Of a stretch of DNA of 64,000 nucleotides, positions 20,936 to 62,679 are shown one piece after another. The first letter of the stretch is position 1, and each line of letters starts with the position of its first letter. This stretch comes from Schmidtea polychroa (Eukaryota). The DNA lies in contig CM097885.1 of the NCBI GenBank assembly GCA_044892525.1, positions 15,128,001-15,192,000 on the forward strand, read 5' to 3'. Under the pieces are notes generated by a model. That model did no database searches and was not told the DNA's origin. It was given only the letters and a program-made list of their open reading frames with translations. Both the position numbers and the translations under genes were made by a program.

Positions 20936-23900
20936 GAAATAGAGCGATAAATCCATTCAGTTTTTAAAATTTCACTTAAGGTACTACCGTGCAACGAACC
21001 TATACCATTCATATTCAACAGGATAAAGCTAATTAATCACCTATCAACCTATTTACTACTCACCAGTTATCGGCTCAACTAGGAATTTTCGAACAGTTAT
21101 ATTTTCATTTTCATATAGAATGATAATTTGCTTTTATTATGATGCTAATAAATAACCGTAATACACCACTTGTTCTCAGTTCTTTTGGTAGTAATTAATG
21201 TTTTATTAAATAATAATTATGTTTTGTCATGTATAGCATTTATGAAAATAATATTTTTATTCATCATTCGTTTCTTTTGTTATATGCATTCAAATAATAA
21301 TCATTCCCTTGAATCTATGTATAAGTAACAATTTGATGGGTAGATCGTTCGAATATGGCAATAGAAGAATGTGATGCACAGTAGAGAATTCATGAGACGA
21401 TATGACTCGGATCTTGGTAGAGATACTGGAATTTTAGCAAAGTATCGTGTGGCAATCTTAGGAGATTCGATCGAAGTGGGGAAAAGTAAAATATTCGTTT
21501 AGTCGAAGATCCATGAATCGAGAGATTTGAGAAGAGCGGAAATAGCGGGGAATGATCCATGACGAGGATGCAGGGATGAGATGGAGTTAGGAGTGAGCGG
21601 TAATCCATGGGAGAGATAGAACGAAGATGATCGATTTGCAGAATATTGATGTAGCCAGCTAAATTGATTATGGATATGTATGATCAGGAGAAGTAGGATA
21701 TGGAAAAAGGAGCTCTATAGTGAAATTTAGGTTTTGGCATGAATAGTTGTGGCAGAAATCAACCGGATATTGATCATGAGGTAGCGGTAGCATAGGTCTG
21801 TGAGGATGGGAATGAACAGAAAATTGCCATTCGAACGATCTACGACTTATTTATCATGATTTAAAATATTATTATTTTAATTACCTTTGATATTATGTTG
21901 ATGATGAGGGGTGGACTGATTAGCCAGGAGGACGTCTGGAACTGTTGATACTCGTATCGATAGGGCACAGATCGTCTTGCTGGATGATTAGTCACGGGTA
22001 TTTGAGTGAAATTATGAACGAATATGAATGAAGAGGGATGGATTCTCTGGATCAGCAATCACAATGTTTCTCCGATTTCACCTTCTATGGTAGGGTAGAG
22101 AGCGCTTTTCTGGACATCACGAAAGACACAGACTTCTTCCTTTTTCGATTTATTCATCTTGTAAAGGGATAGCTTCCGAGACGTGCGACAGAGGGATAAA
22201 ATCCAATTTTCTTACTTCTCCAGTTTGTAATTTTAACGGTTTGATCGCTAACCAGTAGACACCGGTAGTCGCAAAATAACATATCCGTCTTCTTGTACCA
22301 ACTCGTGGGAAACCTGATCTCGTGCACTGATAAAGAACCCCTACAAAAATTCCAGACAGTAAATATCCGATAAAAAATTGACGTTAATAGAGAGTGCCGA
22401 TGTATCCACGATAAACATTCCCTTTTCGATTATTAGATTTCGTTGGTTATAGACGACGTCTGAAGCAAATAGGCATTAGGAGATCCTGATAAATATTTAG
22501 ATAATCTAACTTGTTATGACATAAATCGCGGGGCATAAACTTTACCAAAATCGAATAAACACTCGTGTGTCTATGGGGTCGTCCATCATTGGTAAAAATG
22601 GCAGGTGTTAACCTTCAGAAATTCTTCGTCTCAATTAAATTTCCCTCGCGATAAATAAGATAAGACACGTTAATTACCACACCTTATCAATTGCGAGATA
22701 ATACCCGAGGAAAAGAGAGAAGAATGTCGAAATGTCGATGACATGACAACGGGAGTGCGATAGAAAATACACATATACATTGCGTCACACACACACTAGT
22801 CGCCGGTCACCCATCAGCACACCAGCGCACAACAAAAAAATCCCCGTAGCGACGAGTGTTGCAAGTACCGTAGTAGTCGGGTATGTTTGACTCGCGGAGT
22901 AGATTGTTCGCCAAATAGGCGTGTATAGAATCGTAATATGGCTTTCGTGTAGCAGGTTCCTGATCAGAAGGGGAAACGAATTTTGCGTACCTACAAACGA
23001 TTACATAGATTTTTTTTTGTAAATTAAATTAACATCCACACACCTAGTCAACTAAGCACTCTTATTAACGAATTATTATTAAATTCTGGCATGCTTTAAA
23101 GATCGCAATAAAACAGTTTGGTATGTGACTGCCTGACCACTTTACGAGATGCAATATAGAAAAGGAAATTTTGTATCTGTCAGGAAAATAATAAATCATA
23201 TCTGATATTATTTATTTAGCAGGTGAAATATAAAAATGATCAGAAAAATTGTTAAAATAATCTAGTCTATATTGATTCTCTAGTATGTTTGTCATTTGTT
23301 CTATATAATCTCCTCGTGCAGCTTTGCGCCGAAATTTGGCAAAAGGGCCAGGGCGATAAATATAGCATTTTTCGCATCCACTTATATCCACACTGGGATT
23401 CGAAGATACCCTTCGTGAAAGGTGTTTATTGGAAGGATGAAATAGGATCTTGCGACTAGGGTTTAGATACAAATTACCGTGATTTTCGGACCGAACCCCC
23501 CCCCCCCCCCCTTCCTCAAACCTTCAAGACCTTAACAACCTAATAGCTTACTCTCTGAGTAAAAATGGGCTGAAGATAAAACTGAATGATAAAGCTGATT
23601 AATTAATAAATTCTGACCATTTCACTGATATGCGGTAACTATTTCTAAATCTAATTTTCTAGTTCTATTCGAAATGTCTAAACCAAATCTTCCAACGACT
23701 GGCCCGAGACCGTGCTTCTCGTGTGCCGATAAGAATGTATTACTAAAAGAATCCGCAGAGTACATAGGATCGCTAAAGTGGAAAATCGATAACTTAGAGG
23801 GTACCTGGTTTACCCCGGCCCTCATGAAAGAGGCCCAGATAAAAATTCTCAGACTCGAACACTGTCGGGATAGTCTGCTCGAGGAAAGTCGGAGCCAGCG

Positions 23901-24157
23901 GCCAGGCCCGACGCTAGAGTATTTGGCGCCCTAGGCAAACTAAAAAAATGGCGCCTCTAGTCTAGAAACAAACCCAATAATTAAAGAAGTAAATGAAAAT
24001 AAAATAACTATACTTCATTTATTTATTACACAAAAATATATATAAAAACAAAAACCATTTAAAATTTAATTTTTCGTGCTTTTAGTTTAGCGAAATCTTC
24101 AAGCAGCAACTTCGTATCTATATCACGCGCCATTTCGTGTTCAATCGACAATGTTTC

Positions 24158-25423
24158 TTATGCATGTTCTCTTATGCATATGGGATCTAAATCACAATTT
24201 TCTGTATTTGTATGGACAAAACGAATAATCAACGTCATTTGTTCAGTATGGCTAACGTCTGGTGTGCAATCCAGGATTATTGAAAAATATTTAGCCATGG
24301 AAATCGATTTTAAAATTTTTGTTTTAATACTCTTAGATAAAAGTTGTATTAACTCGATCTGAATATCTTTTCCCAAATAATGAACTTGTGTTTCATTGTT
24401 CTTTATTCTGCGAAGATGCTCACCCATAATTGGATCAAAAGAGGCCAAATATTCTACAAAGCTAAGGAAGTTTCCATTTCCAGGAGAATACAATTTTTCA
24501 TTGCTTCCGCGAAATGCAATATTTTGCGTAGCAAGCACTTTAACTAGACCTATAAGACGCTCTAAGACTTGTTGCCAGTGTCTCTCTTCTTGTTTTATGA
24601 GACGCAAATTATCCTGGTCAATAGTTTTATTCTTTTTTAAACGCAATTCTAGCTCCTTCCAAGTTTGAAAATTAATTAAATGATCCTTATTTTTCTCATG
24701 TCTTTCTAAAATTACAGACATATTTTTCCAATCGCTTGATCCTTTATCGGAGAGATGTATTACACGCTGGTTATTATTAAAAATTTTGCAACAAAAGCAG
24801 AAAGCCGAATTAGTTGTTTTGGAATACTGTAGCCAATGACGCCGCATTTCTTCTCCATTTGCAAGTCTCCTTCTATAAAAATTCATTGAAAATTTTCTAT
24901 GGCTCTCATTTTGAGGAAAATCAAATTCTTCAATTTGTTCTGGTCCGTGTTCAACCAAAATTTGCCTCAAACGGCCAGAACGTAAGTCATGTGAATTTAA
25001 CCAAGTTGCCGGATCACTATAATCAAGACTCGAATTTACGCTTTCTAATATTTCCAAAGTTTCATTAATTAAAATTTCTTCAGTGTCTTCTATAGTTTCT
25101 AATACAATTTCTTCTATAGGTTCTTCAACAGTTTCTTCAATTGTTTCAACTTCAGTTTCTTCTATAGTTTCTTCCACATTCGTATGTGGAAACTCAGTCA
25201 AAATAGGCACCTCTGCATTTCTAGTTGTAGAGTTCCTATCCATTTGCTCTTCCAAATTGCAGTATACTTGTTTTCTCGGAGTCATTTCATTTCGATTTTT
25301 ATCTTGTGATTGTTGACGACAAATATAATTCAGAAAAGCACCTTCTTGCTTTTTTTCTTCATTTTTCTTTTCAGCTTTACGTTTTCTATTTTGTGCGCCA
25401 GATAATTTTTTTCTATCTACCAT
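24158..25423 (-). pseudogene. hAT transposase N-terminal half (TTF zinc finger, DUF4371), C-terminal deletion
   Basis: WLQYSKTTNSAFCFCCKIF; NIAFRG...GNFL; FSIILDCTPDVSH; ORF breaks after the first catalytic Asp, and the tail LSIEHE...FAKLKARKIKF* follows at about 24150-24065. Confidence 0.9.
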
Positions 25424-25897
25424 TATGCTACCTCAAGTAAAAATTAATAGAATATAATAGATTTAATAATAGGTGTAGAAAAATCCAATATAAATTAAAT
25501 TACTGTGTTGTATATATGTAAAAATTATACTGGAAGTACGACCGAAATTATATATACTTTAAATAAAAAAAATTTGAGCCCTGCACTAATTAAATTTTAT
25601 TTTTTTTTTCACTTTCTGTTTATTTATTTTTTAACTTTTTTAACATTTACTTTAGTCTTTTAAAACTTTACTGCATGTGACTTTATTCTTTTAAAATAAA
25701 ACTAAAAATTATTGCGTAATTTAAAAAAATTTCAGAGCATGCTATATGCTAAATTTTTTTTAAAACCGCGTTTCAGTTAACTTTTTTGAACTTGCAAAAT
25801 ATTTTTTTAAATCGATTTTCCGTTGTATTTTTTTAAATTTTAAAAGAAATAAGTAATCGGTATCGGACTAAAACAACGATGGAATTACATGTTTTAC

Positions 25898-25901
<4 letters not shown>

Positions 25902-25960
<59 letters not shown>
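25902..25960. repeat. (TA)n microsatellite
   Basis: Direct reading. Confidence 0.99.
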
Positions 25961-25962
<2 letters not shown>

Positions 25963-26937
25963 AATTCATACATATGTATATATCAATATAAAGATAGAAA
26001 GTTTATAAAATATTTAATTTACTTGATAAAAAAAGCAGAACTATTTGGCGCCCGCTTGTAAATCGGCGCCCTAGGCTGCTGCCGACGTCGCCTATGCCTA
26101 AAACCGGGCCTGCCAGCGGCTCACCATCAAAGCACAATCGGCGGCTCTCCGCCGCATCTATTCGGAAGCCGAATTGAAGGCGCGCATAACCGAGTATCCT
26201 CTCTCGGATAAGGGAAATCCTTTCCCGCAACACCACGAGTAAGTCAACTGGAGCCGGCTCACCCAACTTGCTGTAGTTCCCATGGCCCAACGGTCGTGTC
26301 CCCCGTCGTTGCGGACGTTCTGGAAACGCAAATTCTGGCATCTATACCTTCACTCGTGAATCCTACAAACCCCTTGACGTCTTTGCAGGTAACTCAATCG
26401 GAACTGGTCAAGCAGAAGCGGAAAAAGCAGTTGACACGCGCAGAAAAAACAAAAAAAAACGACGGGAGGAAATTTCTGCTCTGGAAGCGACCTTATTCGC
26501 CATCACTCAGGCAAAAGTAGTACCTCCTACGGGTTCCGTTGCGCAGGTCAAAATCGTGTCAACTACAGTCCCCCGTCGACTCTCGACCCAGTGTTGGAAT
26601 GCGACATCGACGCAATGTTGGCCGAAAGGGAGATGTTCTCGCCAGTACTCCACCTGAAGGGTTCGTCACAATCCCCCTCCAGTCTGACAAATGACTATCG
26701 TAAATTCTGTGAGCAACTATTTGTGATCATGCGTTTTGGTGTAAATTTGTTATGTGTTAAATTTTTGTTGTTTTGTCTGATGTATTTAGAAGCGGATTAA
26801 ATATAATGTATGTTAAAACGCGAAATGTCGTCTCATTGTTTGTTGAATCATCAATTCAACGCTCTAAACACTGTGTTGTAACCGTACAGACAAATCGAAA
26901 AGACCTCACCTGGACCAGAGGCAAATTGCTGATTGAT

Positions 26938-27076
26938 GTAAGTCCTTCTACGGCCTTATAGAACCCAAACAGCGAACACTTTGAGGAGTAGTTTTAGCAA
27001 CAGACCTCACCTGCTCACGGGTTTCGACCTCGGTGGACAACACCAACATGACTCTTTGTCATGGGTACACCAGAGG
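26938..27076 (+). ncRNA. Conserved two-hairpin cis RNA motif, copy A
   Basis: GTAAGTCCTTC; TGAG-GAG...CTC-ACCTG-CTCA; outer stem with 8-nt bulge AACACCAA and inner CATGAC/GTCATG hairpin. Confidence 0.6.
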
Positions 27077-28903: not shown

Positions 28904-29594
28904 ACGAATCAGAACTGGATAATCCTGGTCAGATATTCAAATATGAAGACATTGGCCCAATTTTTGGTGGCTTGAGTCCTGATTTTGACGAGGAATCAGA
29001 AAATGACATTTACGTTCGTGAAATCGGAATCGATATTGACAATGTTATTTTATTTTTGATCTGTTATTTAATATATTTTTTAAAAAATGATTTATTTGAT
29101 ATTGATTTATAAAAACTTTTTATAGAAAACTGGTTATAGTTTTCACAGTTCTTACAACTGTTAAACGCTTGTATAAATGTATTTATAAAAATTTGATTAT
29201 TCCAAATGTTAACTTTTGTAAGAATTTTGGTAGAAATTTTATTATTATATTTTTATTGCAGTGGACACGCAACATTATTTATCGGTTGATAGTATTTTTA
29301 TTTTATTTAAAACTCTAAAGGTAATTTNNNNNNNNNNNNNNNNNNNNNNNNNNNNNNNNNNNNNNNNNNNNNNNNNNNNNNNNNNNNNNNNNNNNNNNNN
29401 NNNNNNNNNNNNNNNNNNNNNNNNNNNNNNNNNNNNNNNNNNNNNNNNNNNNNNNNNNNNNNNNNNNNNNNNNNNNNNNNNNNNNNNNNNTCAACAAGCG
29501 GTTACTAGTTACTAAGGGATGATAGTCCAAAACAGAATGACCTTACAACATATCCTGCGGACCGCTGACCAAAAACCCACACGACTATTTCCAC

Positions 29595-29728
29595 AACATG
29601 ACACCCATGATTTGCATCATGTCGGTACTGTACCATGCCGGCGAGCTACGGTGAAGCAGGTGAGCCCCTGCTTTAGGACTACTCCTTCACCCTAACTCGA
29701 CTTTTCGACTGCCAATAGAAGGACTTAC
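29595..29728 (-). ncRNA. Conserved two-hairpin cis RNA motif, copy B
   Basis: GTGAAG/CTTCAC outer stem with ACCTG bulge; second hairpin with AGTACCGA bulge and CATGAT-GCAA-ATCATG. Confidence 0.65.
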
Positions 29729-30151
29729 GTCTTTTCTACTATTCGAGATGCTGGTCAAGATCACGTGACTCCATTATCCATTACTACTTCATCACCACAA
29801 CTCTTCACTCACTTCGACATTACAGAACCGAATACAACACAAAAATCAACAGAACTCCCTTACCACTTGACTCAACATTTATTTGACGAAATACCTTTAT
29901 GACACCGATTATTACCGCCTATTGGGGTAGTTTTACACAACCTTCCTATTATTAGAAAATCAAAAAAAAATCAGACGACAGAAAGGCTACTCATTCAATC
30001 ACAATATCAAGATGTTTATACAAATATTACAAAGTCTATGGGGAAGTCCCAGCGAAAATCATGTCGAGATCAAAGAAATCTCTCGCGTCTTCTTCCCAGG
30101 TAGTGCTAGAGGTGGGCACTACTCGAAACGTAGGCGGTGATCGGACTGCTA

Positions 30152-30796
30152 CTATCGCTGGCAATGTCTGGAGTTTCTGCGTAGCTTCGGCGACCAGTTT
30201 CGCCTCCCGCTCGGCTTGAAGTAATTTTCGTCTTTCGTCCGTTCGGCTCGGGTTGGTTGCCGTCTTTTTGAAGTGTTCGGTGATACCAGGAGAGTGACCG
30301 CTTCCGGTACGACGACTGGCCTCGGAGGGGCTTGGTTGATGCCGGTGATATTGACGTCCGATTGTACGGATGGTAATAGGGTGTCTACACAACTAGTGCA
30401 AGCCTTGCTTGTTGATCGAATCGGGCTTGTTGAGCGATGATGATGAGGGAAAACATTGTCTTCTTCCGATATCGGTATATTAGCGATCGTCTTAGTAATA
30501 GTCGCTTGCACGTAAACCTTGTGCAGGGCCTCTGATTGTTCCTTGATTAATAACCGTAACGAGCGACTCTCTTCGATCATACTATCGCGGTAGTGTTCGG
30601 CCCGCGCCAGTTTCAATGGTACCTCTTTCATTTGCGCAGGTGAAAAGTAGGTACCCTCTAGATGGTCCGATTTATTTTTTAGCAATCCTATCTGAGTCTG
30701 CAGGGTCTTAATGATGGCATTCTTATCAGCGCACGAGAAACATGGCCGAAGAATAGTTGTAGCTTTTGGAGTTTTCGACATGTCTAAAATAACCAA
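30152..30796 (-). CDS. CxxC/coiled-coil LTR ORF, copy B (214 aa, intact)
   Basis: RPCFSCADKN, EGTYFSPAQMKE, EHYRDS, CTSC, KRRQPTRAE; overlapping ORF 30036-30392 ends TWEEDARDFFDLDMIFAG. Confidence 0.7.
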   Translation of the reverse strand: MVILDMSKTPKATTILRPCFSCADKNAIIKTLQTQIGLLKNKSDHLEGTYFSPAQMKEVPLKLARAEHYRDSMIEESRSLRLLIKEQSEALHKVYVQATITKTIANIPISEEDNVFPHHHRSTSPIRSTSKACTSCVDTLLPSVQSDVNITGINQAPPRPVVVPEAVTLLVSPNTSKRRQPTRAERTKDENYFKPSGRRNWSPKLRRNSRHCQR

Positions 30797-33991: not shown

Positions 33992-34432
33992 TCATAGACC
34001 TAGAGCCTGAGAGAACCGGGGCGAGAATGGGTGGCAATTGTGAGCCATGCCCCTTGCAGCTGGTCGTTGATGAGGCTTCAGGCGACTGATGATGTATCGG
34101 GAACACATTAGTCCCGTCTTGGATGGGATATTCTCGAACTCTTTTGGCGATTTCGGTGTCCTGTAGATCTTGTGTAGGGCCTCGGATTGGGCTTTTATCG
34201 TTAGTCTCTGGCACCTACTTTCTTCCAGGAGACTGTCACGGCAGTGCTCCAATCGTAGAATTTTACTCTTCTCCTCTTTCATTTGTGGCCGGGAGAACCA
34301 CGTCCCTTCATACAAGTCGATGCGCTTTTTTAGTGCCCCAATATAGAGATGAAGTTGCGCTATGTCTGCGTTTTTGTCTGCGCAGGAGAAACACGGGCGA
34401 AGGTCTTTGTTGGAATTGGTTGAAGTAGACAT
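33992..34432 (-). pseudogene. CxxC/coiled-coil LTR ORF, copy C (frameshifted C-terminus)
   Basis: RPCFSCADKN...EGTWFSRPQMKE...LEHCRDSLLEESRCQRLTIKAQSEALHKIY. Confidence 0.8.
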
Positions 34433-38798: not shown

Positions 38799-38806
38799 TT
38801 CATTAT

Positions 38807-42500: not shown

Positions 42501-42655
42501 TCTCCAGGATTGGAGTTTCTTCCATCAGTAAACGTATCGTCATGTTCAGAGTCCTCAGCCGATTTCTGCCCAGTGCTATGAATGATATATAGCAGTAGTT
42601 CTGCTAAGCACTGGGTAACGGCGGGTAATAAGTATTTGAATAGATTGACTTGCAT
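39569..42655 (-). CDS. N-terminal region of the NeSL polyprotein: C2H2-like fingers, low-complexity linker, inserted Asn-rich segment
   Basis: 1028-aa ORF with four Cys/His clusters near its C-terminus; separated from the Ulp1-like part by a single in-frame TGA. Confidence 0.75.
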   Translation of the reverse strand: MQVNLFKYLLPAVTQCLAELLLYIIHSTGQKSAEDSEHDDTFTDGRNSNPGDIINKNLILSQSNLLSRSDKAPSNRNGRSSNPGNGIKDKLLSTFTNPPYRNNEIRFLESPYASCPDVSNLDAPRKPDDCEVMDSRFCPARKILKKYGISPPCYDIIAPENASSDPTRDTSWKAFCPARRIHILNKNKGNYNQNFYNDYNHKKSIHELICNNCKCNLNSKNCNVIFDNHNFNLNFKNYELKLNCNNCNLIKSNSKYTFNLNNENLNLKDKNNNYENDQTNYNSKYTFNLNDKNLILKDKNNNENVQTNYNSKYTSNLNVENLNLKDKNNNYENDLTNYNYEKFFKNKIKYVIKKIIIDYNKIQNSTERLPNELISIIFNNISDFISLNKLSILNKDKSLFKYHLFNHAFSLKNFSRVPSEHEKTRSSQAYGRLASAKTVTFSGNPVSLSPTLEHSTGTQPANSQATDTFLTSLNKPNYLANSSNIPTIPVNPSNNNLGTSMKRHYSEPIPNDFIHKPKDLKNLPPTYNDNNNKVIKSCFVKKIIRKGKYTTLYSIYKNKNKINNYENNTDDSLIALPHVKRSPLNDTIDNDSDLSPNHSSSSCSDYILDTSHYSCDLDDTIDPLPMDESNSQTPHNPSQSLVNPQPNNDLFNSDIDDVNLSSSSIASIDQEPPLQPTASSSPDNNTDLHPMTTASLHNTPELTQSKTTNAIELSSTPKITAPTPSESECNEIQEALRIQSQMEVFNKKIQVFATNIPGPSPNYLRPITLAKHTRNVFIPKTADESELDNKIFFKLNGRGKIECRLKCKTTLCSPISVHNRKKIFKHAWDFHRLKIDENTLIDCIQCRAPGENKYAPNPITFKQIYNHIVHFQHIDQCDLEYMSRAEIRISPSNNLTCFNYSKNRKKCKITFDIDTPLMTIINHIKVKHKKLIFYPDEEVYCFCGSWIPHHHVRQHILENHPEPYVYPGNIPTPPVISQVMDSSPDNVNNLRPILESQEFEATFSESEIVKRPLPDTLIFGNNVEKEST
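41640..41900. repeat. 84-87-bp tandem repeat x3 inside the ORF
   Basis: Encodes SKYTFNLNxxNLxLKDKNNNxENxxTNYN three times. Confidence 0.9.
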
Positions 42656-44452
42656 TTAAAAATTTTTAAGAGAAAAATCTGTTTGCAGATAGTCAGAAGA
42701 ATTAGTCGGAGCGGTGAATGAAAAATGGATTGCTATGAGGGCTTGGGTTAATTATTAATCTACCAGATAAAATTGATTCCAGAGTTAGATTTTCCTCTGC
42801 TATGTTGATTCGTGATAAGGACTGTCAACTCGTTCGCTCAACGGCCTCCACCCATAATCGATACACTAGATATCTTATCGACTGTCTGACTGTCTACTGC
42901 GACTAACTCTAATCTGAATGGAAATGAACAGATGATTACTCGAGATTACAGTTTCTTTCGGGCTTATGGTAAGTGTTTTAATCTATTATCAAGAAATGTT
43001 TACATTCATATCTAAGTCGAGCTATTATCGATGACAGTGGCTAGGCACCGGCCGATTATCAAGTCTATTCAGAACCAATAAAATCAAGATTATGGATTTA
43101 TTCGTTAGCGTCCTGGCGATGCAAATCTTAGAAAAGCTTCAATAATCATGACACCCAACGCGAACACCGTCTGAACCCCGCAAATAATGATCTCCTGACG
43201 GATATTTAGACAACCAATTTTTGCAATGTAAGAGGAAATCGTCTATCAATCAAAGCTCAATAAAGACGCGATTGGATATAGTGCTGATGATTTCTCAAAT
43301 CGTACTCCTCCTGGATTCAGTGGATTCATTTTCGGCTTCAAATTATGTAACTGCTAGTTTTCAATTGAAAATCTTTTCGACGACGAGAGTGGCTGATCTC
43401 ACTCGGTGAAAGAACCTCTGGCATCATATATTATCATTTCTCTCGGGGTTTCCTCACCCCTCATGACCCACCCAAGAACAGTACGCAATGCTGCCACCGC
43501 TCTTATACCGTCATGAAGGACGAATCGACCCAATTACTCTCAGAACAATAAATATAGCAAAAATCAGTTACGGATATCAATAAATAAATAAAATGAATAT
43601 TTACCTGGCGACCATGCCATTTGGGTTCCTGGTGTGATGAGTCTCAATTCCTCCACCGTTTCGTTGCTTATTTGTTCATCTTTCCGCATTTCACAAGCCT
43701 CCATCATCTTGGCTGATGTCCCCCACATTACTTATCTCTTCGATTTCGAAAAATTACTCGGATTCATATCTACAACTCATTTCCATCACACCAGAAGCTC
43801 CCAGAGGACATCGTCGCCAGCACCATGAAGAAAAAGCAATATGTTGTATGATAAATAAAATTTATTAATATTAAATTGTTAGTTTGAATATCATTTCAAA
43901 ATAAAATCTAAATACACATAAATAAAATAAATGATAACCCTTACCAAAATTCTTCCTTGAGGATGTCGAAAATTTGAATCAAACGGTATCTTAAAAATTT
44001 TCGCTAAAGCTAATGTCCTGGTTCTCTTAACTTAATTCACTGTCCGATCTGTCTAGATAAATTCGGTTCGATTCTGGTAAACGATCCCTGTAAATGATTT
44101 GTGAAGTTTTGTTCAAAGTGGTTCCGGTTAGTAGATTGAATGAGTATCGTCCCTGTAGTGTTTGGTTAAAAATCGGTTCCTGCAATCGTGGATTAAAAAG
44201 TGGTTCCTGAATGTCGTTCTGTAGAGTTTGGTTAAAAGTGGTTGTTCAAATTTAAAAATTTTACCTGTAGAGTTTGGTTAAAAGTGGTACTCTAGTAATT
44301 TTTCGCGTTTCTTATATACTATTTTTTATCCAATCAGGACTCGGTTAGTTTGTAATTTTATTATTTATTATTATTTTTATGTTTTTCATTGTAATATAAT
44401 GAATTTTAGTGACCTTATTTTATTTTTTATTATTATTTTATTATTTTCTTAA

Positions 44453-52350: not shown

Positions 52351-53352
52351 TTTGGGATTTTAGTCGTGAGCAAAACCTGTTTAAAATTTACAGTTAGATT
52401 TGATTGGTCTACAGAAATTGACAATGGATATCTTATAGTCGAAAATTTTTTAATTTATATTAAATATGCTATTTGTAACAAAGGGCTTAAATTATCATTT
52501 AATTGTTTAAAATTTAATTCATGCTGCTACCAAAAAAATCATCACTTTATAATTATAACACCCTTAATTATTAAATTGTATTATATTTAATTTCCACTAC
52601 CACAAGTGACAATTTGCAAAAAAATTAATTCCAACACTGCCTATTAAACACAATATATAAAATGCCAAGTAAAGCTGAAAATGATGAAATAGCAAAAAAG
52701 AAATTTAACTTAATATTTTATTTATTATTTGTCAGTAAAACTTAGAGTATTGAATAAACCAATTTTATTATGCTTAAAACGAAAATTATATAGAGAATTA
52801 AATTTATAATATTTTTAGTAATTAAAGAAGTCGTTAATGACAATCGATAATGGTAATATTTAAATAATTAAGATAAAAATATGAAATTTTTATTTTCACA
52901 AAATTTATCTTTTCAACCATAAGCTGTCGTAAGTTATTCATTTGATCGATTCATGAAAAGTAACACAACTATTAAAGGTTTTCAACTAAAAGAGTGTTTC
53001 TTTGGTTCATGAATATAATATATTTCTATATAAAATAAATGTTTTTTTCCTCTCAAAATATTTCGACGTTTCGAATTTTAAGATTATTGGTCTACCGATT
53101 CAATATTAGAAAGAAATTTATTCGGCCAATATATCACCAGATTGTTGGGCTGAGTCGAAAAGTATATAGGAAACTAGGAAGTAAGAAACTAAATAAAATA
53201 AAAACAAAAACAAACAAACTTAAAAATAAACAATAATCAAACATATGTTGGTGTATGTAGGGGGAAAGATCAACATTATTATCAAACACTCAAATCGTCA
53301 TCGTTCAATTCGGCCTTTTCCCGACATACATCCAAATGATCTTGCTAATATT

Positions 53353-53491
53353 CCGACGCATGAGCCCGTGGTGATGTTCCACGTTGGTGCTGCCCACACG
53401 GGTCGGAAGAGGTTAGCAGGTGAGCCTCTGCCTTAAAACTACTCCTAACCCCTTCTCGGTTCAGGTTCCTAGGCGCCTTGGAAGGACTTAC
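53353..53491 (-). ncRNA. Conserved two-hairpin cis RNA motif, copy D
   Basis: GGGGTTAG/CTAACCTC outer stem, ACCTG bulge; second hairpin with AGCACCAA bulge and CGTGG/CCACG. Confidence 0.65.
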
Positions 53492-54539
53492 CCATTTCCA
53501 TGCTCATACTCGGTCCAACCCTGGTCCAAGGGGTCGACCTTCATTTCATGGCATGTATTCAGTTAATAAATCAATCCATGCGTTTTACTCACCATTCTCA
53601 CAATTAAATCAACCAACATCAAGGAAATTATATTATTTGCATCACACGCTACAGGTTATTGAAGACAAAACATCTTACACTAATGTTTAATATAATATCG
53701 ACCAAAAACACTGATGAGTTGTCATGCACATAAGGATTGGTTAGTAAGCCTATTAGGAACAAGAGGTCGACACTGTCGTCACGTTAGGTCCTCAGAAGGC
53801 TTCTCCGTCGGCGAACACTTCGTCTATGTCTACGGGATATCGACGGTCCGCAAGATACTTGATTCCATCGGCCGGAACCACTCTAAATATTTCCTTGGCC
53901 GGAATCACATGGGAGGCTGAGATATCCTTAATAGTGGACTGGGCCACATCTACTATTGGAAATAACAAGATTCACTAAGAAACGATCAAATCTTCGCGTT
54001 GATGTTGGAATATATAACGATTTCCTCTGAGCTTTCCTATGCAATTTCTCTCTTTTACCGAGCTAGAAGGCTACTATTCCTCCATGGAAAAGTTGTCAAG
54101 ACATCATCGATCTCACTCGGCGAAGAAGCTCCTCTCGACTCGATCATTATTATCGACCAGATGTCCTCACCCCTCCTGACCCACCCAAGAGTGGCATACA
54201 TCTCTGTCACCACTCTTGGACCGTCAGGAAGGACGATTCTATCTCTACCCAACTCCCATCATAAATATATAGTGAACGATTATCAAAAAAAAATGAATTA
54301 CATGATTTGCTAGATGGATTTACCTATATAAAAAGATTATTTACCTGGCGACCACGCCGTCTGAATTTCGAACATGATGCCATATCGTAGTATCCATCCT
54401 ATTTTTACTGCTTCATTTCCAGTGAGGTCTCATTTATTCAGATCCTCAATTCAACGTCTTCACTGCTTATCGTTCATTCATAGGCATTTCCATTCATTCG
54501 AGTAAAGGATTATATATTAAACCGAATATCGAACCCACG

Positions 54540-55031: not shown

Positions 55032-58000
55032 TTAAAAATAAAGCATTTTAGTTAATTCTCTTTACACATATATATATATATATATATATATATCAATCAT
55101 AAACATAAGAATTCATTCATACTATTTACTACAATGATTTCTTCGAGAGTATTGAAACCAAGATCTATGAATTTTTCCCTTTTTCCTAGTAAATCGTATG
55201 GTTAGTTTTGCTGAAATTTCGATCGCTGTCTATTGAATGCTATATAAATGTTTGATGAATAGTTCTGGAAGGTTTTCGTATATCCTAGTCTGGTAGGTTC
55301 TGTTAGTAAATTGAATGAATATCGTCCCTGTAGAGTATAGCGGTTAAATGGTACTTAAAAATAATGGAATTTTACCTGTAGAATATAGCGGTTAAATGGT
55401 ACTCTACAGATATTCTTCATTGCTTATATACTATTTTTCGTCCAATCAGGACGCGACTAGTGTGTAATATTATTGTTTATTATTTTTATGTTTTTTAATG
55501 TAATATGTTAGATTTTAGCGACTTCTCTTATTTTTATTATTATTTTATTTATTTTCCTATTTTTTATTATCTTTCTCCTGTTTTTCTTATGACTTTATTG
55601 TTATTCGGTTATAATATAATTTTTTGTTTTAATTACTTCATATAAATATTTGAAAATGGTTTTATTTCTATTTTATTCCTAATATCTTGTTTATTTTTCT
55701 TAAATTTATTATTTTATTTCCTTCCGCTATCATAGGTGTTAGGTAATTTTCTTTTTCGTCTTACTTTTCGTCTTATGAACTTTATTATTTTATTATTTAT
55801 ATTTATTCCCTTTATTTTCTTTTATTGTTGTCTAATTTAATTGTTCTTATAGTTTCTGTGTTTTTTTTCGGGAAATTTATTTTATCCTTTTTTATTTATC
55901 CTTAACCTGGTTCTCAATACTCTCGAAGCTTGGCCCAACACATAAAAGAAACAATCAACTAAGAAAATAAGAATTAAAACAAAAAATAAAATTAAGAAAA
56001 TTTAAATAGGAAAATATAATGACGCATAAAATAACGAAAAATGCAATAAATAATCAGGAAATTAATAAAACAAATAAAAAATATAATAAAAATAAAGAAA
56101 ATTAAGGAAAATAACAAAAAAAAACAGGAAAAAGTAAACTAAATTAGAAAATAAGCGGTACTCAATACTGATTGGTCCGCACAAATGAAAAATTACTATA
56201 TAAACTGGCATTAAACCCTCACAATTACAGTTAACAAAAAATTCTACTTAGGTAAGGAACAATGTAAATTATCAACAGTTAACAAAAAATTCTACTTAGG
56301 TATTACCAGCAATAGACAGGAACTCCAGTTACGAATCATCGACAAATTTCGAATAATATTCAATCAGATCCAGTACATTTCGACTCAGCCTTCAAATCTA
56401 TCGAACAATTTGGTAAGGGAATTTTTTAATTATTACTACTTTCGTATCGTAATGTTAATTAGATAAAATTAATTTGTAATGATACTATTTCTTTTCATTT
56501 GATCTAGAAAATTTTTGGTAAATGTCGTTTCTATGCTTAATAAACGTATTATTTATAAACGGTTATGATTTATTTTATAATGGAATGATTAACAAATTTT
56601 ATGATTTCAACTTGCTGAGGAACGTGGAGTTGAGACTTTTCATACCATGGTGTGAGGGGCCTTCGGGTGCTCAGCCGGTGGGTATGAAATGTTTCAATCA
56701 CGCAGCTGATTCGGGCCGAAATGTGGGGGCTTCCTCACGGGTCCGTCGCTGAAGGTGCGACTAAATTATATGAAAAGATTACTCTAGAAAGGTGGTAGTT
56801 ATACAGTGATTAGAAGAGTAGATGTATAGAAGAGTTTTTGAGAATTCGCACAGTGATTGAGGGGGTCACACTATTAATTCGTAGGGTCGTCTTTGTGAAC
56901 TTTATAACATCTCGGTTATCTGAAAAATCCATACAACGATTCCTCGAATTCGTCTAAAAATTGGTGTCATCTCATAGCATACATCACCTAAAGGCATAAT
57001 CCTACGAAAAATGATTCCTATAACTTTCATTTTCCAGAACTCCGTAAACGTATTTTATCATATATCTCTTTCGCGCGTGCTTGATTTTGATAAATCTGTC
57101 AAGGTCGTATGTTAAAGTAAATTCCAAAAATTAACTAATTCTAAGAAGTACAAAAATACCACTAAATCCAATTTAACGAAATTTATTTCCCACAAAGAAA
57201 AACAGTTCAGCACAATATCTACCCAATATATCGAATATATAATGTCTGAGACTTAATTACGAACATTTACGATAATCCATCCAATTTAGAAAATTCCAAT
57301 CCGGATAGAGCACAGCGAGTAGTTGAAAATTAGCTTTTTTCTTTATTGTCTTCTATCGATCATCGAGATATTCCGTAAAAGTCCAACTATTGATGCTAAC
57401 GATGAGAAAAATTCCATATTGAGAGATAGCAGCAGTAGTAATGGAAAATTTCTATAACCGATCGTGCGGTGAGAGTCAGATAACATACGAATGACGAAAC
57501 GTCTGGGAAAATAACATCAAATGAGATAAAATCACAAAATTCATTTTGAGTAACGATCGGCAGCACGCAAGTTCACATTAGATAGGGCAGAGCAGAATAC
57601 ACACAGTAGGAGTAATTCCACTCAAGCACCAGACAATTTCGCCATGAAAGTCACAATTACACACACCGATTCACAGCGACAAATCAACATACAAGCATAT
57701 TAGTAGTCCCAGCATACCGCTGATGATAAATGGATAAACGAATTCACACCCACTACACGCTATGACTGCTATCGGTAAAGATCCAGCTATTAAAATCTCC
57801 TTCACATGCCATTCAGTGTTATCTCGAGTAGATGAGAACTAACCTAGTAGATTTGATCAGTAAACGTTAGATTCCTAGCACTAGGCAGATGTTCTGATTT
57901 CTTCAACATTTATACAAAGTTTATCAAACACGTCTGGTTAATTTCACTATTATCCTCTTCACATTGAACTAACCACAATAGGTCGCTAAATTATGATGTA

Positions 58001-58567: not shown

Positions 58568-59230
58568 TTGCATATTCTATATCTCAATCTTACCTTTATA
58601 GCTATCATGATGCCAACTGCGAAGCCCGTGTTACGTCCATGCTTCTCCTGCTCGGATAAAAACGCAATCATCAAGGACCTACAGACCCAGATTGGGCGAT
58701 ATAAAAAGAAAATAGATGAATTAGAGGGGACATGGTTTAGTCCCGCTCAAATGAAAGAAACACAGAAAAAGCTATACCGTAGCGAACATTGTCGGGACGC
58801 TCTAATCTCCGAGAGCCGTTCCAAAAGAAGTTTGATAAAGGAGCAGTCCGAAGCGCTGCACAAAGTACACCTGCAGGCAGCGACCACTAGGAAAATAGTC
58901 AGAATTCCCATCAATGAAGCCGACAATCTCTTTCCGGCACACCACGACACTTCTTCAAAGTCGTCGCCTCCTTCTAAGAAGTCTTGCCAAGAGTGCATAG
59001 AGACTCAGCTCTCGCCCAAACAACCAGACGTCATTTTCGTGGGAACAAGTAAAGCGCCACCTACTATCGCTTCTACATCCACTATACCTCCAACTAATCC
59101 AACGACATCCAAGCCAAAGCGTCGGCAATTATCAAGAGCCGAATGTAAAAGGAAGCAGCGGGAGCGAATAACCACCAAGCAGAACACACAACCAACGGAA
59201 ATTGTAGCCAGGCATATGCATCTCACCTTT
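58568..59230 (+). CDS. CxxC/coiled-coil LTR ORF, copy E, truncated by the viral insertion (likely start at MMPTAK)
   Basis: RPCFSCSDKN...EGTWFSPAQMKE...EHCRD...CQEC...KRRQLSRAE. Confidence 0.75.
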
Positions 59231-59262
59231 ATAAATACGAGGTTTCATTTTATAATTTCAGA

Positions 59263-60165
59263 ATGACTGATAATATTCTAAATACTTTTGTAGAAAAAAT
59301 TAAATTGTACTTAAACAAACCAAACGAAACTTACCCAGAATATATTTTACCTGAATATTTCAATAGATTTTCAGACACACCGAAGGCATATATCAAAGAA
59401 GATAGTGAAATTTATTCACTATACAAACACTATTATAACGAATTTCATCCGCTACTGATTGGTCCACACTCGGTCAAATTAGCATTCGTATTAGATTCAT
59501 TTGCTGGTAAGTTTAGTTTATATGAATATTTTATTATTTAAATATTAGATTTAGATTTTCAAAACGACATATTAGAATTATGGGATCTAGTAATCATGAA
59601 AAGGACGATGAGGGTCAATCAAATACCAATCTCTCCAATGATGGACGAAGTCATGAGAGGAAACGAAGGAGACATTCTTCTCGAAGACATAAACGAACTC
59701 ATCACAAACGACATTCCAGCATACAAGAAATCTCTAGCGACAGTCAAGAGCGGTCAAGTAGTATATCTACCGTACTGTCTGGCACATCTGTGTCCGATAT
59801 GCGAACTCCTTCGAAGACTAGTTCGATACCTAAAATCAAGCGACCTGCTAAGCACGTTTCCCGCAAACATTCGAGCAGGAGACACAATGATTCTCAGCAT
59901 CGTGATATACCAGCTATCAAAGATGTTACTGAGTTGGTTTCAGATAATAAAGCTCAAAATAATCATCCGGAACGAGCAAGAAGATTTAATTCCTTCAAAT
60001 TTCAAGTATCTGTTAACAAATATCGATCTTTGGAGCCGGAGCTTAAAAAGCTCATGGAGGACAAATCCTTCACAAGATTCGTTACAGGTCAAGAAGAGGA
60101 AGGTGATAATGGATATCACCATATGCAAATGTATTGGGAGGTATTATTTATTTTATTCAATTTAG
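59263..60165 (+). CDS. Spliced accessory ORF (exon 59263-59506, exon 59555-60165) overprinting Rep
   Basis: G|GTAAGT donor at 59507 and TTAG acceptor at 59554 (or 59548) join ORF 59263 in frame to ORF 59596. Confidence 0.6.
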
Positions 60166-60999
60166 ATATTAATGGAATAAAATTAATAATTACAGATTTA
60201 CAACAATATGTCAGTATATGCCTTTAGGGCAAAGACGGATATTCCCTTTGTCAGAGGAGTCGCCGGAGTCGAGCGTCAATCCGCTATCGAATATGCAACA
60301 AAACCTGAGTCTCGAGTTACAGGAGGACTATCTGTAAACATAGGAACTCAAAGTAAATTCAATTGTGCTTCTAATACAGATTACTTCAAACAAGCTCTAA
60401 ATTCTGCCTCGATGAAAATAGGATTAGAAATATTAATGCAGCACGAAGCATTCCATTACACAACAAAACGAAAAACAATAATGGAAACTTTCGTAAATAA
60501 ATTCGGACAATCAACTATGCCAAATTTTAATGACAATTTCATGATTGACAAAATAAATTTACTTGACTGGAAGAGCCATATTTTTGTTGGAGAATCTGGC
60601 ATTGGTAAAACAAACTTTGCCTTGTCACACTTCAAGAATCCTGTTCATTGCAAGCATCTCCAAATGCTTAACAGAATATCCGATAATGTAGATAAATGTG
60701 ACGGTGTAGTTTTTGACGATCTATATTTTAATAAAACAAGAATAGAAGAATTTCTTTCATTGGTAGATTGTGCATATGAAAATGTCATAAATATCAAGTA
60801 TTCGGTAGCTGTTGTTCCAAAGGGATTACCCAGAATATTTTGTATAAACGATTTGGACCTATTTTACCCAGAATGCATTTCTCCAACAATTATGGAAGCT
60901 GTACATAGAAGAATAAAAATACATCATTTCCGAGGCAGGATATTTAGAGAATACAAATCTGAACAAGTAAAAATTTTGTTATATTATTTTTTAAATTAA
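59580..60999 (+). CDS. rep: Rolling-circle Rep (HUH endonuclease + SF3 helicase), exons 59580-60140 and 60196-60999
   Basis: Motif I-like FKFQVSVN, motif II HHMQMY, motif III YATK, Walker A GESGIGKT, Walker B VVFDD, motif C RIFCIN, Arg finger AVHRR; a 55-nt GT-AG phase-0 intron joins the halves. Confidence 0.85.
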
Positions 61000-61171
61000 T
61001 TATTAGACAATGAAACATCCATATCTGATACCGAGCCAATGTCCCAACCAAAGTGTCGATTGCTCAGTATCCAGTGCAAATCATGTATGAAGTTCATGCG
61101 AATTTACTTGGGAGTGTGCAATAATAGTTTTTAATGTTTAATGTTTTATAATAATAAATGTTTATAAACAG

Positions 61172-61840
61172 TTAAAAGAAATTCTTTATTTTATCAAAAA
61201 TATCATACTTAACATCATTCAATACATTTATATCTTCAAATACATTTATATGAGTATTAAATTCGTATGCCTTTTCTACAACAATATATAGGGAACGATT
61301 TTTAAGAGCTTGTTCATGTTCAGAGGCATATTTCCATATAGGATGATTATTGGATATTATACATGGGCAATTACTTAGTTCAATTTTTGAATCACCTTTA
61401 CGAGAAACTTTTAGAAAAATATTACCTTCACATAATAACTTTAATAAATTAACATTTTTGAAATCGCAATATATTTCTTCTCCAATGATAATTTCTTTTC
61501 CGACACAATCATCGAAACAAAATTCACTTTGAGTTTGTGCACCAGTAAAAAATCCATGTTTAAGAGTCCCACGACAAATTGCAGTAAATAATGTTTTTCC
61601 ACCATTACTTGCACCTTCTAATATAATCGTCTTGGTCTTTCCGGCTTGAGACGATAAGATTGTATATATCCCAAGAAGACGACGAATATATTTTTCATTT
61701 TCTTTAGGGATAATGTGACGATTTTCAGAAATAAGTTTATTAATTTGTCGATTGTGATCGCTGTTAAAATGGAAATTATTGTTATTAATAAAAGCTTCCA
61801 TAAAAGTTGATAATTCATTGTATAACAATAGCTTATTCAT
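61172..61840 (-). CDS. Stand-alone parvovirus NS1/papillomavirus E1-like SF3 helicase domain
   Basis: Walker A GASNGGKT, FCFDDC...IIIGEE (Walker B), KLLCEG...VSRK (B'), PCIISNN (C), ALKNR; no nuclease domain. Confidence 0.85.
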   Translation of the reverse strand: MNKLLLYNELSTFMEAFINNNNFHFNSDHNRQINKLISENRHIIPKENEKYIRRLLGIYTILSSQAGKTKTIILEGASNGGKTLFTAICRGTLKHGFFTGAQTQSEFCFDDCVGKEIIIGEEIYCDFKNVNLLKLLCEGNIFLKVSRKGDSKIELSNCPCIISNNHPIWKYASEHEQALKNRSLYIVVEKAYEFNTHINVFEDINVLNDVKYDIFDKIKNFF

Positions 61841-62034
61841 TAGACAATGAAAGATAATTGTAATATGTGTGTATAAATATTATTGATTATTTGTGTTTTA
61901 TGACTCATCTTAAAAATATTATAGTAAAGTAAAGGCATTTATTACTATGCCATTCTTGGATAACCCATCTGCCTGTACTTTACTATATATATTTTAATAA
62001 ACTCCCACGCAGTCATGTGTTTTGCGGTGTGCTT

Positions 62035-62173
62035 CTCTCATAGACTTGGTAAGAGAGGGGTGTCGGGGGGCCCCTATATCTATAGCACGCCATGGCGTGC
62101 TTATTAATAAACCATGGTTTATTATGAGATATAGGGGCCCCCCGACACCCCCCTCTTACCAAATCTATGAGAG
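62035..62173. repeat. T-shaped terminal hairpin (inverted repeat with two internal palindromes)
   Basis: 47-bp arms 62035-62081 and 62127-62173 (2 mismatches); palindromes GCACGCCATGGCGTGC 62085-62100 and TAATAAACCATGGTTTATTA 62105-62124. Confidence 0.95.
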
Positions 62174-62537
62174 TGACTTGGGAGGAGAATGCCTCTGAGA
62201 TTTTCGACTTAGAGGAGTTGCTAGCAGATACGGAGTGTTAGAAATAAGAATGCTCTCGTGGGGTAACTCTATCATTAGGAAAATAGTCGAACTAAATATC
62301 ATCGTGTTTTTCTGTCATTGTTTTCTCTCATCTAGATATTCCTGTTGTATATAAATCATCGATGTTGTGTATGTTTGATGCTACAACAAATAATTTTATG
62401 TCTTTACCTCATTTAGTTTGTAAAGGATTTAGTATGACTGTAACAAAGAGGGTTGAAGGTTCCTCGAGAATTCTAGGAGTATTAGTCAATTGTATCCCAA
62501 CCAGAGGTAGGAAAGTGAATTTATAATTCGGATAGAC

Positions 62538-62679
62538 GTAAGTCCTTCTATCGGCGGTCGAAAGCGGTAAGTCGAGGCCTCAGTAAGGAGTAGTCCTAAG
62601 GTAGGGGCTCACCTGCTTACTGGTGTCTCGCCGGCATGGTACAGTTCCAACGTGGAGCAATTCACGGGTACCATGTTGG
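62538..62679 (+). ncRNA. Conserved two-hairpin cis RNA motif, copy in unit E
   Basis: CAGTAAG/CTTACTG stem with ACCTG bulge; CCGGCATGGTAC/GTACCATGTTGG stem, AGTTCCAA bulge, CGTGGA-GCAA-TTCACG. Confidence 0.65.

What the first reader, a model, noticed from the sequence alone, without database searches (positions are those of the whole stretch)
62538..62679. Covarying two-hairpin RNA motif conserved about 105-115 nt from the end of four diverged LTRs
Copies at 26938-27076, 29595-29728(-), 53353-53491(-) and 62538-62679. Hairpin 1: the outer stem changes completely but stays paired (TGAG/CTCA, GTGAAG/CTTCAC, GGGGTTAG/CTAACCTC, CAGTAAG/CTTACTG) around invariant GAGTAGT, CTC and a 5-nt ACCTG bulge, with a constant 17-nt inner segment. 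Hairpin 2: covarying outer and inner stems, an 8-nt bulge ARYWCCRA, a single G opposite it, and GCAA tetraloops in two copies. An invariant GTAAGTCCTTC lies upstream. It does not match hammerhead, twister or HDV cores by eye. Candidate roles (inference): packaging/dimerisation or priming signal, splice-control element, or a new ribozyme.
Basis: seen in the sequence. Interest (0 to 1): 0.85.

Follow-up and report, generated by a model that had tools for sequence, protein, structure and literature searches.

The report
Conserved two-hairpin RNA, not in LTRs
Four old, diverged copies of an unclassified repeat each keep the same ~140-base folded RNA about 300 bases after a small orphan gene, so the RNA is real and under selection, but it does not lie in LTRs and its job is still unknown.

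Summary
The motif is real. Its invariant blocks occur exactly four times in the window, with about 0.01 expected by chance. The stems keep pairing through compensatory changes: 87% of cells pair, against 38-45% in slid controls, and 12 pairs change on both sides. Sixteen G·U pairs and much lower folding energies in three of four copies put the RNA on the stated strand. No reading frame runs through it, and none of Rfam's 4227 families matches.

The LTR context is not supported. There are no paired repeats, no second motif copy upstream, and no RT or integrase next to the units. The flanks are no more alike than shuffled DNA.

Each copy instead lies 299-310 nt (measured in three copies) after the stop of a repeated orphan gene, which I call ORF-X. 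ORF-X encodes a helical hairpin followed by a basic region. Its synonymous sites are saturated while the protein is conserved. In other animals it turns up fused to unrelated host genes, which is how a mobile element behaves.

Best reading (confidence 0.4): a protein-recognised cis-acting RNA in the 3' part of this element's transcript, starting at an invariant splice-donor-like GTAAGT. Rivals are a structured intron, a new ribozyme, and an snRNA-like gene. With only four copies, function cannot be settled.

The parts
62538..62679 (+). Motif copy c4 (the finding): invariant GTAAGTCCTTC 62538-62548, linker 62549-62572, hairpin 1 62573-62630, hairpin 2 62631-62679
   Evidence: MFE -51.3 kcal/mol, z -4.7; the MFE fold is the two-hairpin model
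62573..62630 (+). c4 hairpin 1: basal stem 62573-76/62627-30; 4x4 internal loop; outer stem 62581-87/62616-22; invariant GAGTAGT 62588-94 facing CTC+ACCTG 62608-15; inner 3-6 bp stem and 6-7 nt loop 62595-62607
   Evidence: the outer stem differs in all four copies and stays paired
62631..62679 (+). c4 hairpin 2: outer stem 62631-42/62668-79 (12 bp), 8-nt bulge 62643-50, inner stem 62651-56/62661-66, GCAA loop 62657-60, single G 62667
26938..27076 (+). Motif copy c1 (hairpin 1 26973-27026, hairpin 2 27028-27076); the weakest fold of the four
   Evidence: z -1.6
29591..29728 (-). Motif copy c2 (hairpin 1 29699-29642, hairpin 2 29641-29591); 81% identical to c4
   Evidence: z -5.6
53354..53491 (-). 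Motif copy c3 (hairpin 1 53458-53402, hairpin 2 53400-53357)
   Evidence: z -2.75
58607..62240 (+). ORF-X copy D, upstream of c4. Broken once, by one nested insertion of about 2.9 kb of foreign DNA. Its stop lies 299 nt before GTAAGT
30039..30781 (-). ORF-X copy B, upstream of c2. Broken once, by one frame change. Its stop lies 310 nt before GTAAGT
23674..26800 (+). ORF-X copy A, upstream of c1. Broken by one nested hAT-like insertion and at least two frame changes, and the original stop is not kept
53792..53971 (-). C-terminal piece of an ORF-X copy upstream of c3, with its stop 303 nt before GTAAGT. The N-terminal domain is not recognisable
33995..34432 (-). ORF-X copy C: N-terminal part only, with no motif downstream (truncated unit)
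62241..62537 (+). A+T-rich spacer between the ORF-X stop and motif c4. Its length is kept (299-310 nt in three copies) but its sequence is not

Best explanation
The motif is a cis-acting structured RNA in the 3' untranslated part of the transcript of an unclassified, mobile-element-like repeat. That repeat's only recognisable gene is ORF-X, a ~290-aa protein with an N-terminal helical hairpin, a disordered middle and a basic helix. Two irregular hairpins act as a scaffold. Their stems are free to change as long as they pair. Their unpaired parts are fixed: GAGUAGU facing CUC+ACCUG in hairpin 1, the 8-nt A-R-Y-W-C-C-R-A bulge facing one G in hairpin 2, and GUAAGUCCUUC at the 5' edge. These fixed parts are what a partner reads. 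The partner is most likely a protein, either ORF-X's own basic region or the machinery of a helper element. It would mark the transcript for handling such as nuclear export, packaging or copying. The GUAAGU edge would additionally engage the splicing machinery as a donor-like site. Shown: the structure, its strand, its non-coding nature, purifying selection on it, and its fixed position after ORF-X. Inferred: that it is transcribed together with ORF-X, that a protein reads it, and what the consequence is.
For: The motif occurs 4 times against about 0 expected. 87% of cells pair against 38-45% when partners are slid; 12 pairs change on both sides against 0-5; 0 of 500 shuffles reach the observed values. 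A hand-made structural alignment gives 115 of 119 cells paired, with 16 G·U pairs that would be mismatches on the other strand. Sense-strand MFE is -39 to -51 kcal/mol in c2-c4 (z -2.8 to -5.6) against about -31 kcal/mol antisense. No frame is open through all copies. The flanks are at random-level identity while the motif gives z 4-13. Neighbouring ORF-X copies have saturated synonymous sites (pS 0.81-0.94) but pN of only 0.24-0.32. The invariant nucleotides of the motif have therefore survived a divergence that erased neutral sequence. An ORF-X stop lies 299-310 nt upstream on the same strand in three copies, and the C-terminal peptide is also present in the fourth. ORF-X behaves like a mobile-element gene: its 13 distant homologues are animal gene models in which it is joined to unrelated host domains. 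ORF-X has a confident helical hairpin and a basic helix, and its homologues carry long arginine runs.
Against: There are only four sequences from one 64-kb window. The alignment used was fitted to the model, and a proper R-scape-type test has no power at this depth. No expression data exist. Co-transcription with ORF-X is inferred only from strand and constant spacing. The element's ends, class and way of moving are unknown, and no helper is identified. Copy c1 folds weakly, and its antisense strand folds slightly better. Five ORF-X copies within 35 kb could also be a decayed local gene cluster rather than insertions. No related copy was found in any outside collection.
Confidence: 0.4

Rival explanations
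1. Structured intron. GTAAGT is a working 5' splice site, and the two hairpins form the 5' part of an intron of about 215-255 nt in the 3' UTR of the ORF-X transcript. The structure would control splicing, or would survive as a stable intron-derived RNA.
For: Conservation begins exactly at an invariant GTAAGT. The 300 nt before it are at random-level identity. By general knowledge this hexamer is the animal splice-donor consensus. A pyrimidine-rich stretch ending in AG lies 216-255 nt downstream in c1, c2 and c4. In other species, gene models splice ORF-X-like exons to host exons.
Against: The exon-side bases before GT are not conserved. The candidate acceptor region is not conserved (z about 0) and c3 has none at that distance. 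Pyrimidine-AG strings are common by chance. There are no junction reads to consult.
Confidence: 0.22
2. A new class of self-cleaving ribozyme that trims the element's transcript. The invariant internal-loop nucleotides of the two hairpins would dock to form the active site.
For: The conservation pattern is that of small ribozymes: fixed nucleotides in internal loops and bulges, with freely covarying helices. Two adjacent helix-loop-helix domains are present. The motif sits in a repeated mobile-element-like unit, as with ribozymes of other repeat families (general knowledge).
Against: No match to any Rfam ribozyme family in any copy, even at E up to 10. No cleavage site or conserved pseudoknot could be identified. 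The same pattern fits protein-binding RNAs equally well. Nothing computed here bears on catalysis.
Confidence: 0.1
3. One reading: the motif lies in the R-U5 part of LTRs of an LTR retroelement and serves as a leader signal for packaging, dimerisation or priming.
For: The spacer before the motif is A+T-rich with TATA-like strings. ORF-X would sit where a last internal ORF sits before a 3' LTR. Homologues in other species carry a PPPY string, as known from Gag late domains (general knowledge).
Against: There are no paired repeats anywhere. The covariance model finds no motif upstream of ORF-X copies A, B or D. The only reverse transcriptase in the window is a non-LTR type 2-20 kb away from the units, and no integrase, protease or capsid-like fold was found. 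No tRNA-complementary site or tRNA-like element was seen. The supposed LTR bodies are not alignable.
Confidence: 0.07
4. An independent small RNA gene, either an Sm-class snRNA-like or a spliced-leader-RNA-like gene, that merely neighbours ORF-X. It would consist of a donor site followed by hairpins and a U-rich Sm-like site.
For: GTAAGT is followed by hairpins. A U-run followed by GG lies 17-25 nt after hairpin 2 in c1, c2 and c3. The copies are clustered within 35 kb.
Against: c4 lacks the U-run at that place. The sequence before GT, which would be the leader exon and promoter, is not conserved. No Rfam snRNA or SL family matches. The RNA would be much longer than such RNAs usually are. The fixed 300-nt spacing to ORF-X argues for one unit.
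Confidence: 0.06
5. A DNA-level signal, such as transposase or recombinase binding sites or single-stranded DNA hairpins of a rolling-circle or parvovirus-like replicon.
For: Parvo_NS1-like and P-loop ORFs and a 139-nt palindrome lie next to c4.
Against: That DNA is a nested insertion present only at copy D; c1-c3 have nothing like it. 16 of 115 pairs are G·U and valid on one strand only. There are no terminal inverted repeats.
Confidence: 0.03

Closest known systems
Export and response elements of retroviruses (constitutive transport element type, Rev/Rex/Rec-response type)
   Same: A long irregular hairpin RNA placed after the last ORF, with fixed internal-loop nucleotides and covarying stems. 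It lies next to an unused splice donor. An arginine-rich, oligomerising small protein is encoded nearby, and ORF-X has that general layout.
   Different: No sequence or model match (Rfam). No LTRs, gag, pol or env around it. Binding is untested. The Pfam REV hit on homologue P0006 is below threshold (E 0.0013).
3'-UTR stem-loops of stringent-type LINEs and their non-autonomous partners
   Same: A conserved structured RNA near the 3' end of a repeat, read by a helper's reverse transcriptase. The unit itself may lack the enzyme.
   Different: The motif is larger, with two hairpins over about 110 nt, and lies about 110 nt from the composition-defined end. It has no similarity to the LINE in this window. 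There is no A-rich or short-repeat tail and no 5'-truncation series.
Ribozyme-bearing repeats (retrozymes, Penelope-like elements with hammerheads; hairpin-ribozyme architecture)
   Same: A repeated non-autonomous unit carrying a small RNA with fixed loop nucleotides. Two adjacent helix-internal loop-helix domains are present, as in the hairpin ribozyme.
   Different: No Rfam ribozyme family matches in any copy. There is no three-way junction core and no LTR or tandem arrangement. Catalysis is untested.
Sm-class snRNAs and spliced-leader RNAs
   Same: A donor site followed by hairpins and, in 3 of 4 copies, a U-run followed by GG.
   Different: The upstream 'exon' is not conserved, the RNA is much longer, c4 lacks the U-run, and no family matches.

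Membership tests
LTR of an LTR retrotransposon or retrovirus | Two direct repeats flanking an internal region (or a solo repeat alignable to such repeats) | tested here: not met
   Self-comparisons find no such pair. The covariance model finds no motif upstream of ORF-X A, B or D. The flanks of the four copies are not alignable.
LTR of an LTR retrotransposon or retrovirus | Neighbouring gag/pol (capsid fold, protease, RT, RNase H, integrase) | tested here: not met
   Pfam on neighbouring ORFs found none; the only RT is a non-LTR type (RVT_1 + zf-RVT) at 36198-38798. The ORF-X model is a helical hairpin, not a capsid fold.
LTR of an LTR retrotransposon or retrovirus | Defined termini with target-site duplication; primer-binding site after the repeat; polypurine tract before it | tested here: inconclusive
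   Only chance-level 8-mers are shared between candidate ends. No tRNA or tRNA-like site was found. The ends cannot be placed from four unalignable copies.
Known self-cleaving ribozymes (hammerhead, HDV-like, twister, twister-sister, pistol, hatchet, hairpin, VS) as held in Rfam | Match to the family covariance model | tested here: not met
   No match at gathering score over the whole window. At E up to 10 each copy gives a different noise hit and none is a ribozyme.
Known self-cleaving ribozymes | Site-specific self-scission | not testable with these tools
   Needs RNA end data.
microRNA precursor | Conserved arms with a variable loop; a regular ~22-bp stem | tested here: not met
   The pattern is the reverse: stems vary while loops and bulges are fixed, and there is an 8-nt one-sided bulge. 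The mir-1976 hit scores 15 bits against a 71-bit threshold.
H/ACA snoRNA (hairpin-hinge-hairpin-tail) | Single-stranded hinge and tail boxes between and after the two hairpins | tested here: not met
   The two hairpins abut with 0-1 nt between them. No snoRNA family reaches threshold.
tRNA or tRNA-like element | Cloverleaf | tested here: not met
   ARAGORN finds no genes in the window.
Sm-class snRNA or spliced-leader RNA | Sm site between hairpins; conserved 5' part; discrete small capped RNA | tested here: inconclusive
   A U-run followed by GG is present in 3 of 4 copies. The upstream sequence is not conserved. There is no family match. Expression is not testable here.
Protein-coding exon | A frame open in all copies | tested here: not met
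   Every frame is interrupted by stops in at least two copies, on both strands.
Rev/RRE-type protein-RNA pair | Specific binding of the arginine-rich protein to the structured RNA | not testable with these tools
   Only the layout is seen.

The most novel reading that the evidence does not exclude
ORF-X and the RNA together form the whole working kit of an undescribed class of small animal mobile element. Either the RNA is a new self-cleaving ribozyme class, or it is the specific target of ORF-X's basic region, giving a Rev/RRE-like export or packaging pair outside the retroviruses.
Probability: 0.12. Interest if true: 0.85.

Novelty: new variant of a known kind. Interest (0 to 1): 0.55.

Why it matters
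Strongly constrained, covarying RNA structures in animal repeats are rarely described outside the ribozyme-bearing families and LINE 3' ends. Here an RNA of about 140 nt has kept 26 or more fixed nucleotides and all its helices across a divergence that saturated synonymous sites next door. It also sits in a repeat family whose protein has no annotated relative. If more copies confirm the structure, it would give a new RNA family. It would also give a handle for classifying an unrecognised element that contaminates gene models in several animal genomes, and a defined candidate for a protein-RNA recognition pair or a new catalytic RNA.

Tried and rejected
These searches and checks found nothing that bears on the motif:
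- Rfam gave nothing, either at gathering score over the whole window or at E up to 10 on each copy.
- Exact-pattern scans of viral, metagenome and prokaryote genome collections returned 0 hits or 15 chance hits. None of the chance hits had the hairpins or the upstream block.
- Protein searches for ORF-X returned no hit or only unnamed UniParc models (HMM search). No DNA context could be fetched for those models or for window ORFs, and viral loci gave none. The organism and further copies therefore stayed out of reach.
- Pfam, PDB sequence, PHROGs and Foldseek searches on ORF-X gave nothing informative.
- A literal search of the literature for the invariant strings found nothing relevant.
- A search for terminal inverted repeats or target duplications found only chance matches.
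- A third hairpin that would present GTAAGTCC in its loop can be drawn in c2, c3 and c4, with one compensatory change, but it has no energetic support (z about 0). I left it as a possibility only.
- I rejected the idea of a rod-like deltavirus-type copy: there is no long self-complementarity.
- I rejected the idea that the motif is the target site of a site-specific insertion: nothing is conserved upstream of ORF-X.
- MAFFT alignments of hairpin 2 put c1 and c3 out of register. I therefore used the model-fitted alignment for the pair counts and a hand segmentation as the check.

Full report
WHAT IS THERE

GTAAGTCCTTC starts at 26938(+), 29728(-), 53491(-) and 62538(+). GGAGTAGT, 13 variable bases and CTCACCTGCT follow 32-38 nt later. 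Allowing three mismatches, the second block still occurs exactly four times in 64 kb, against 0.01 expected. The first block occurs four times exactly. A covariance model built from the four copies finds only these four, with E 1e-16 to 1e-22. The window itself is A+T-rich (22-40% G+C) and full of animal-type transposons: a non-LTR RT, a piggyBac transposase and hAT-like ORFs.

IS IT A STRUCTURE?

- **Pair counts.** On the model-fitted alignment, 87.4% of cells form standard pairs, against 38-45% when partners are slid by 1-3 columns. Twelve pairs carry changes on both sides, against 0-5 in the slid controls. No shuffle out of 500 reaches any observed measure.
- **Hand check.** That alignment leans towards the model, so I also segmented the four copies by hand. 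This gave 115 of 119 helix cells paired. The hairpin 1 outer stem is different in every copy and always paired. Hairpin 2's inner stem switches A-U to G-C at two positions.
- **Strand.** Sixteen pairs are G·U, so pairing falls to 83% on the opposite strand.
- **Folding energies.** Single-sequence folding recovers the same two hairpins as the minimum-energy fold in c2, c3 and c4 (-48.8, -39.5 and -51.3 kcal/mol; z -5.6, -2.75 and -4.7). Their antisense strands reach only about -31 kcal/mol. Copy c1 is weak (z -1.6), and its antisense strand folds slightly better.
- **Not coding.** No reading frame stays open through all copies.
- **Register of the inner stem.** The data cannot separate them, because the bases involved are invariant or are runs of Y and R.

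With four sequences, none of this is a formal significance test.

THE CONTEXT IS NOT AN LTR

- Self-comparison of the window finds no long direct repeats around the copies.
- Between copies, the 300 nt before the motif, the 110 nt after it and the next 200 nt are no more alike than shuffled sequence (z -0.8 to 1.3). The motif gives z 4-13, and c2 and c4 are 81% identical.
- The 'end' about 110 nt downstream is only a fall in G+C.

What does recur is an ORF upstream on the same strand, which I call ORF-X.

- There are five copies within 35 kb.
- Its C-terminal peptide and stop lie 299, 303 and 310 nt before GTAAGT in c4, c3 and c2. The same peptide is also present before c1.
- All copies are damaged. 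Copy A has one nested hAT-like insertion and at least two frame changes. Copy B has one frame change. Copy C is truncated and has no motif. Copy D has one nested insertion of about 2.9 kb. The copy before c3 keeps only its C-terminal piece.
- Nothing is conserved upstream of ORF-X. No motif lies upstream of any ORF-X, and no terminal inverted repeats or convincing target duplications were found.

The unit is therefore ORF-X (about 0.9 kb), an A+T-rich spacer of about 300 nt, and the motif. It has no terminal repeats.

WHAT IS ORF-X?

- It has no Pfam, PDB or PHROG relative.
- The word-indexed protein searches found nothing annotated.
- A full HMM search of 1.84 billion representatives gave 13 hits. 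All are unnamed UniParc entries. In each, the ORF-X-like domain is joined to an unrelated host domain: neurotransmitter symporter, glycine-cleavage P protein, CRAL-TRIO, ribosomal L21, subtilase, actin, ABC, tyrosine phosphatase, ion channel or hAT transposase. That is the usual trace of a dispersed mobile element swallowed by gene predictions.
- These homologues carry long arginine runs and a PPPY string.
- The AlphaFold model shows a confident helical hairpin (residues 15-97, pLDDT above 90), a disordered middle and a basic helix. Foldseek returns only generic coiled coils.
- Between window copies, synonymous sites are saturated (pS 0.81-0.94) while pN is 0.24-0.32.

The copies therefore descend from lineages that separated long ago while under selection for the protein. 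The same depth of divergence randomised the spacer but left the motif's loops invariant and its helices compensated. This is the main argument that the RNA is functional.

WHAT IT IS NOT

- It matches no Rfam family, at gathering score or at E up to 10. Each copy gives a different noise hit.
- No tRNA-like element was found.
- It is not miRNA-like, because the stems vary while the loops are fixed.
- It has no H/ACA-type hinge, because the two hairpins abut.
- Outside collections gave only chance matches, so no further copies could be added.

HOW IT MOST LIKELY WORKS

I commit to a cis-acting RNA in the 3' part of the ORF-X transcript (confidence 0.4). Its two hairpins display fixed unpaired nucleotides to a partner. 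That partner is probably a protein, possibly ORF-X's own basic region or a helper element's machinery.

Conservation starts exactly at an invariant GTAAGT, the animal splice-donor hexamer by general knowledge. The RNA therefore probably also engages the splicing machinery. One form of that is the main rival (0.22): the hairpins are the 5' part of a 3'-UTR intron. Pyrimidine-AG strings lie 216-255 nt downstream in three copies, but they are not conserved.

The other readings are weaker:
- A new ribozyme (0.10) fits the conservation pattern but has no positive evidence.
- The LTR-leader reading (0.07) fails its defining tests.
- An snRNA- or SL-RNA-like gene (0.06) is suggested by a U-run followed by GG after hairpin 2 in three copies. 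That run is also complementary to the CC(A/G)A of the 8-nt bulge, so it could equally be a pseudoknot partner.
- A DNA-level signal (0.03) is contradicted by the one-strand G·U pairs.

NOVELTY

The RNA belongs to no described family. Its host element is unclassified and its protein is an orphan. The kind of thing it is, a constrained cis-RNA of a mobile element, is known. I rate it a new variant of a known kind, interest 0.55.

- I used them as leads.
- I have not repeated them here beyond the outer bounds of genes and of neighbouring features, and nothing was deleted.

Noticed in passing
window 59580-62173: Foreign DNA is nested in ORF-X copy D. It holds two overlapping P-loop ORFs at 59580-60227 and 60208-60999 (+), with no Pfam hit and only a PDB match at E 0.65 to a 'replication-associated protein'. 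It also holds a Parvo_NS1-like helicase piece at 61172-61840 (-) (Pfam E 6e-14) and a 139-nt near-perfect palindrome at 62035-62173. This could be a fragment of a parvovirus-like or other small-DNA-replicon integration that kept a terminal hairpin.
   Followed up: partly
window 24158-25423 (-); protein P0008: A hAT-like ORF (DUF4371) is nested in ORF-X copy A. In another species a gene model (P0008) joins an ORF-X-like N-terminus to a related hAT transposase (33% identity, tblastn E 1e-40). The same two families are thus neighbours in two genomes. Whether this is chance, a target preference or a real link is unknown.
   Followed up: partly
window 62241-62537, 29729-30038, 53492-53794: The spacer between the ORF-X stop and the motif keeps its length (299, 310 and 303 nt) although its sequence is at random-level identity between copies. 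This hints at a constraint on spacing.
   Followed up: partly
window 27094-27100, 29567-29574 (-), 53331-53336 (-), 62676-62679: A U-run followed by GG lies 17-25 nt after hairpin 2 in c1-c3, and a TTGG directly follows the hairpin in c4. It is Sm-site-like, and it is also complementary to the CC(A/G)A of the 8-nt bulge, so it could be a pseudoknot partner.
   Followed up: no
window 62525-62560, 29740-29705 (-), 53505-53470 (-): In c2, c3 and c4 the bases just before GTAAGT can pair with the bases just after GTAAGTCC(TT). The stems are 5-6 bp, with one A-U to G-C switch between c2 and c3. This would place the donor-like hexamer in a 10-13 nt loop. It has no energetic support (z about 0) and is unclear in c1.
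   Followed up: partly
window 36198-42655 (-): A non-LTR retrotransposon is present: an 866-aa ORF with RVT_1 and zf-RVT, preceded by ORFs of 239 and 1028 aa with no Pfam match, in a stretch of strong G-over-C skew on the + strand.
   Followed up: no
window 44835-46817 (+); 44208-44451 and 55316-55559: An intact-looking piggyBac-type transposase ORF (660 aa, DDE_Tnp_1_7, E 1e-83) is present. A 77%-identical 250-nt repeat lies upstream of it and again 11 kb away.
   Followed up: no
window 10726-10989: A tandem array of a 22-nt unit, about 12 copies at 93-100% identity.
   Followed up: no
window 27207-27392 (+): A 61-aa acidic ORF starts about 130 nt after motif c1, in DNA that stays G+C-rich. 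No counterpart exists after c3 or c4, and there is no family match.
   Followed up: partly
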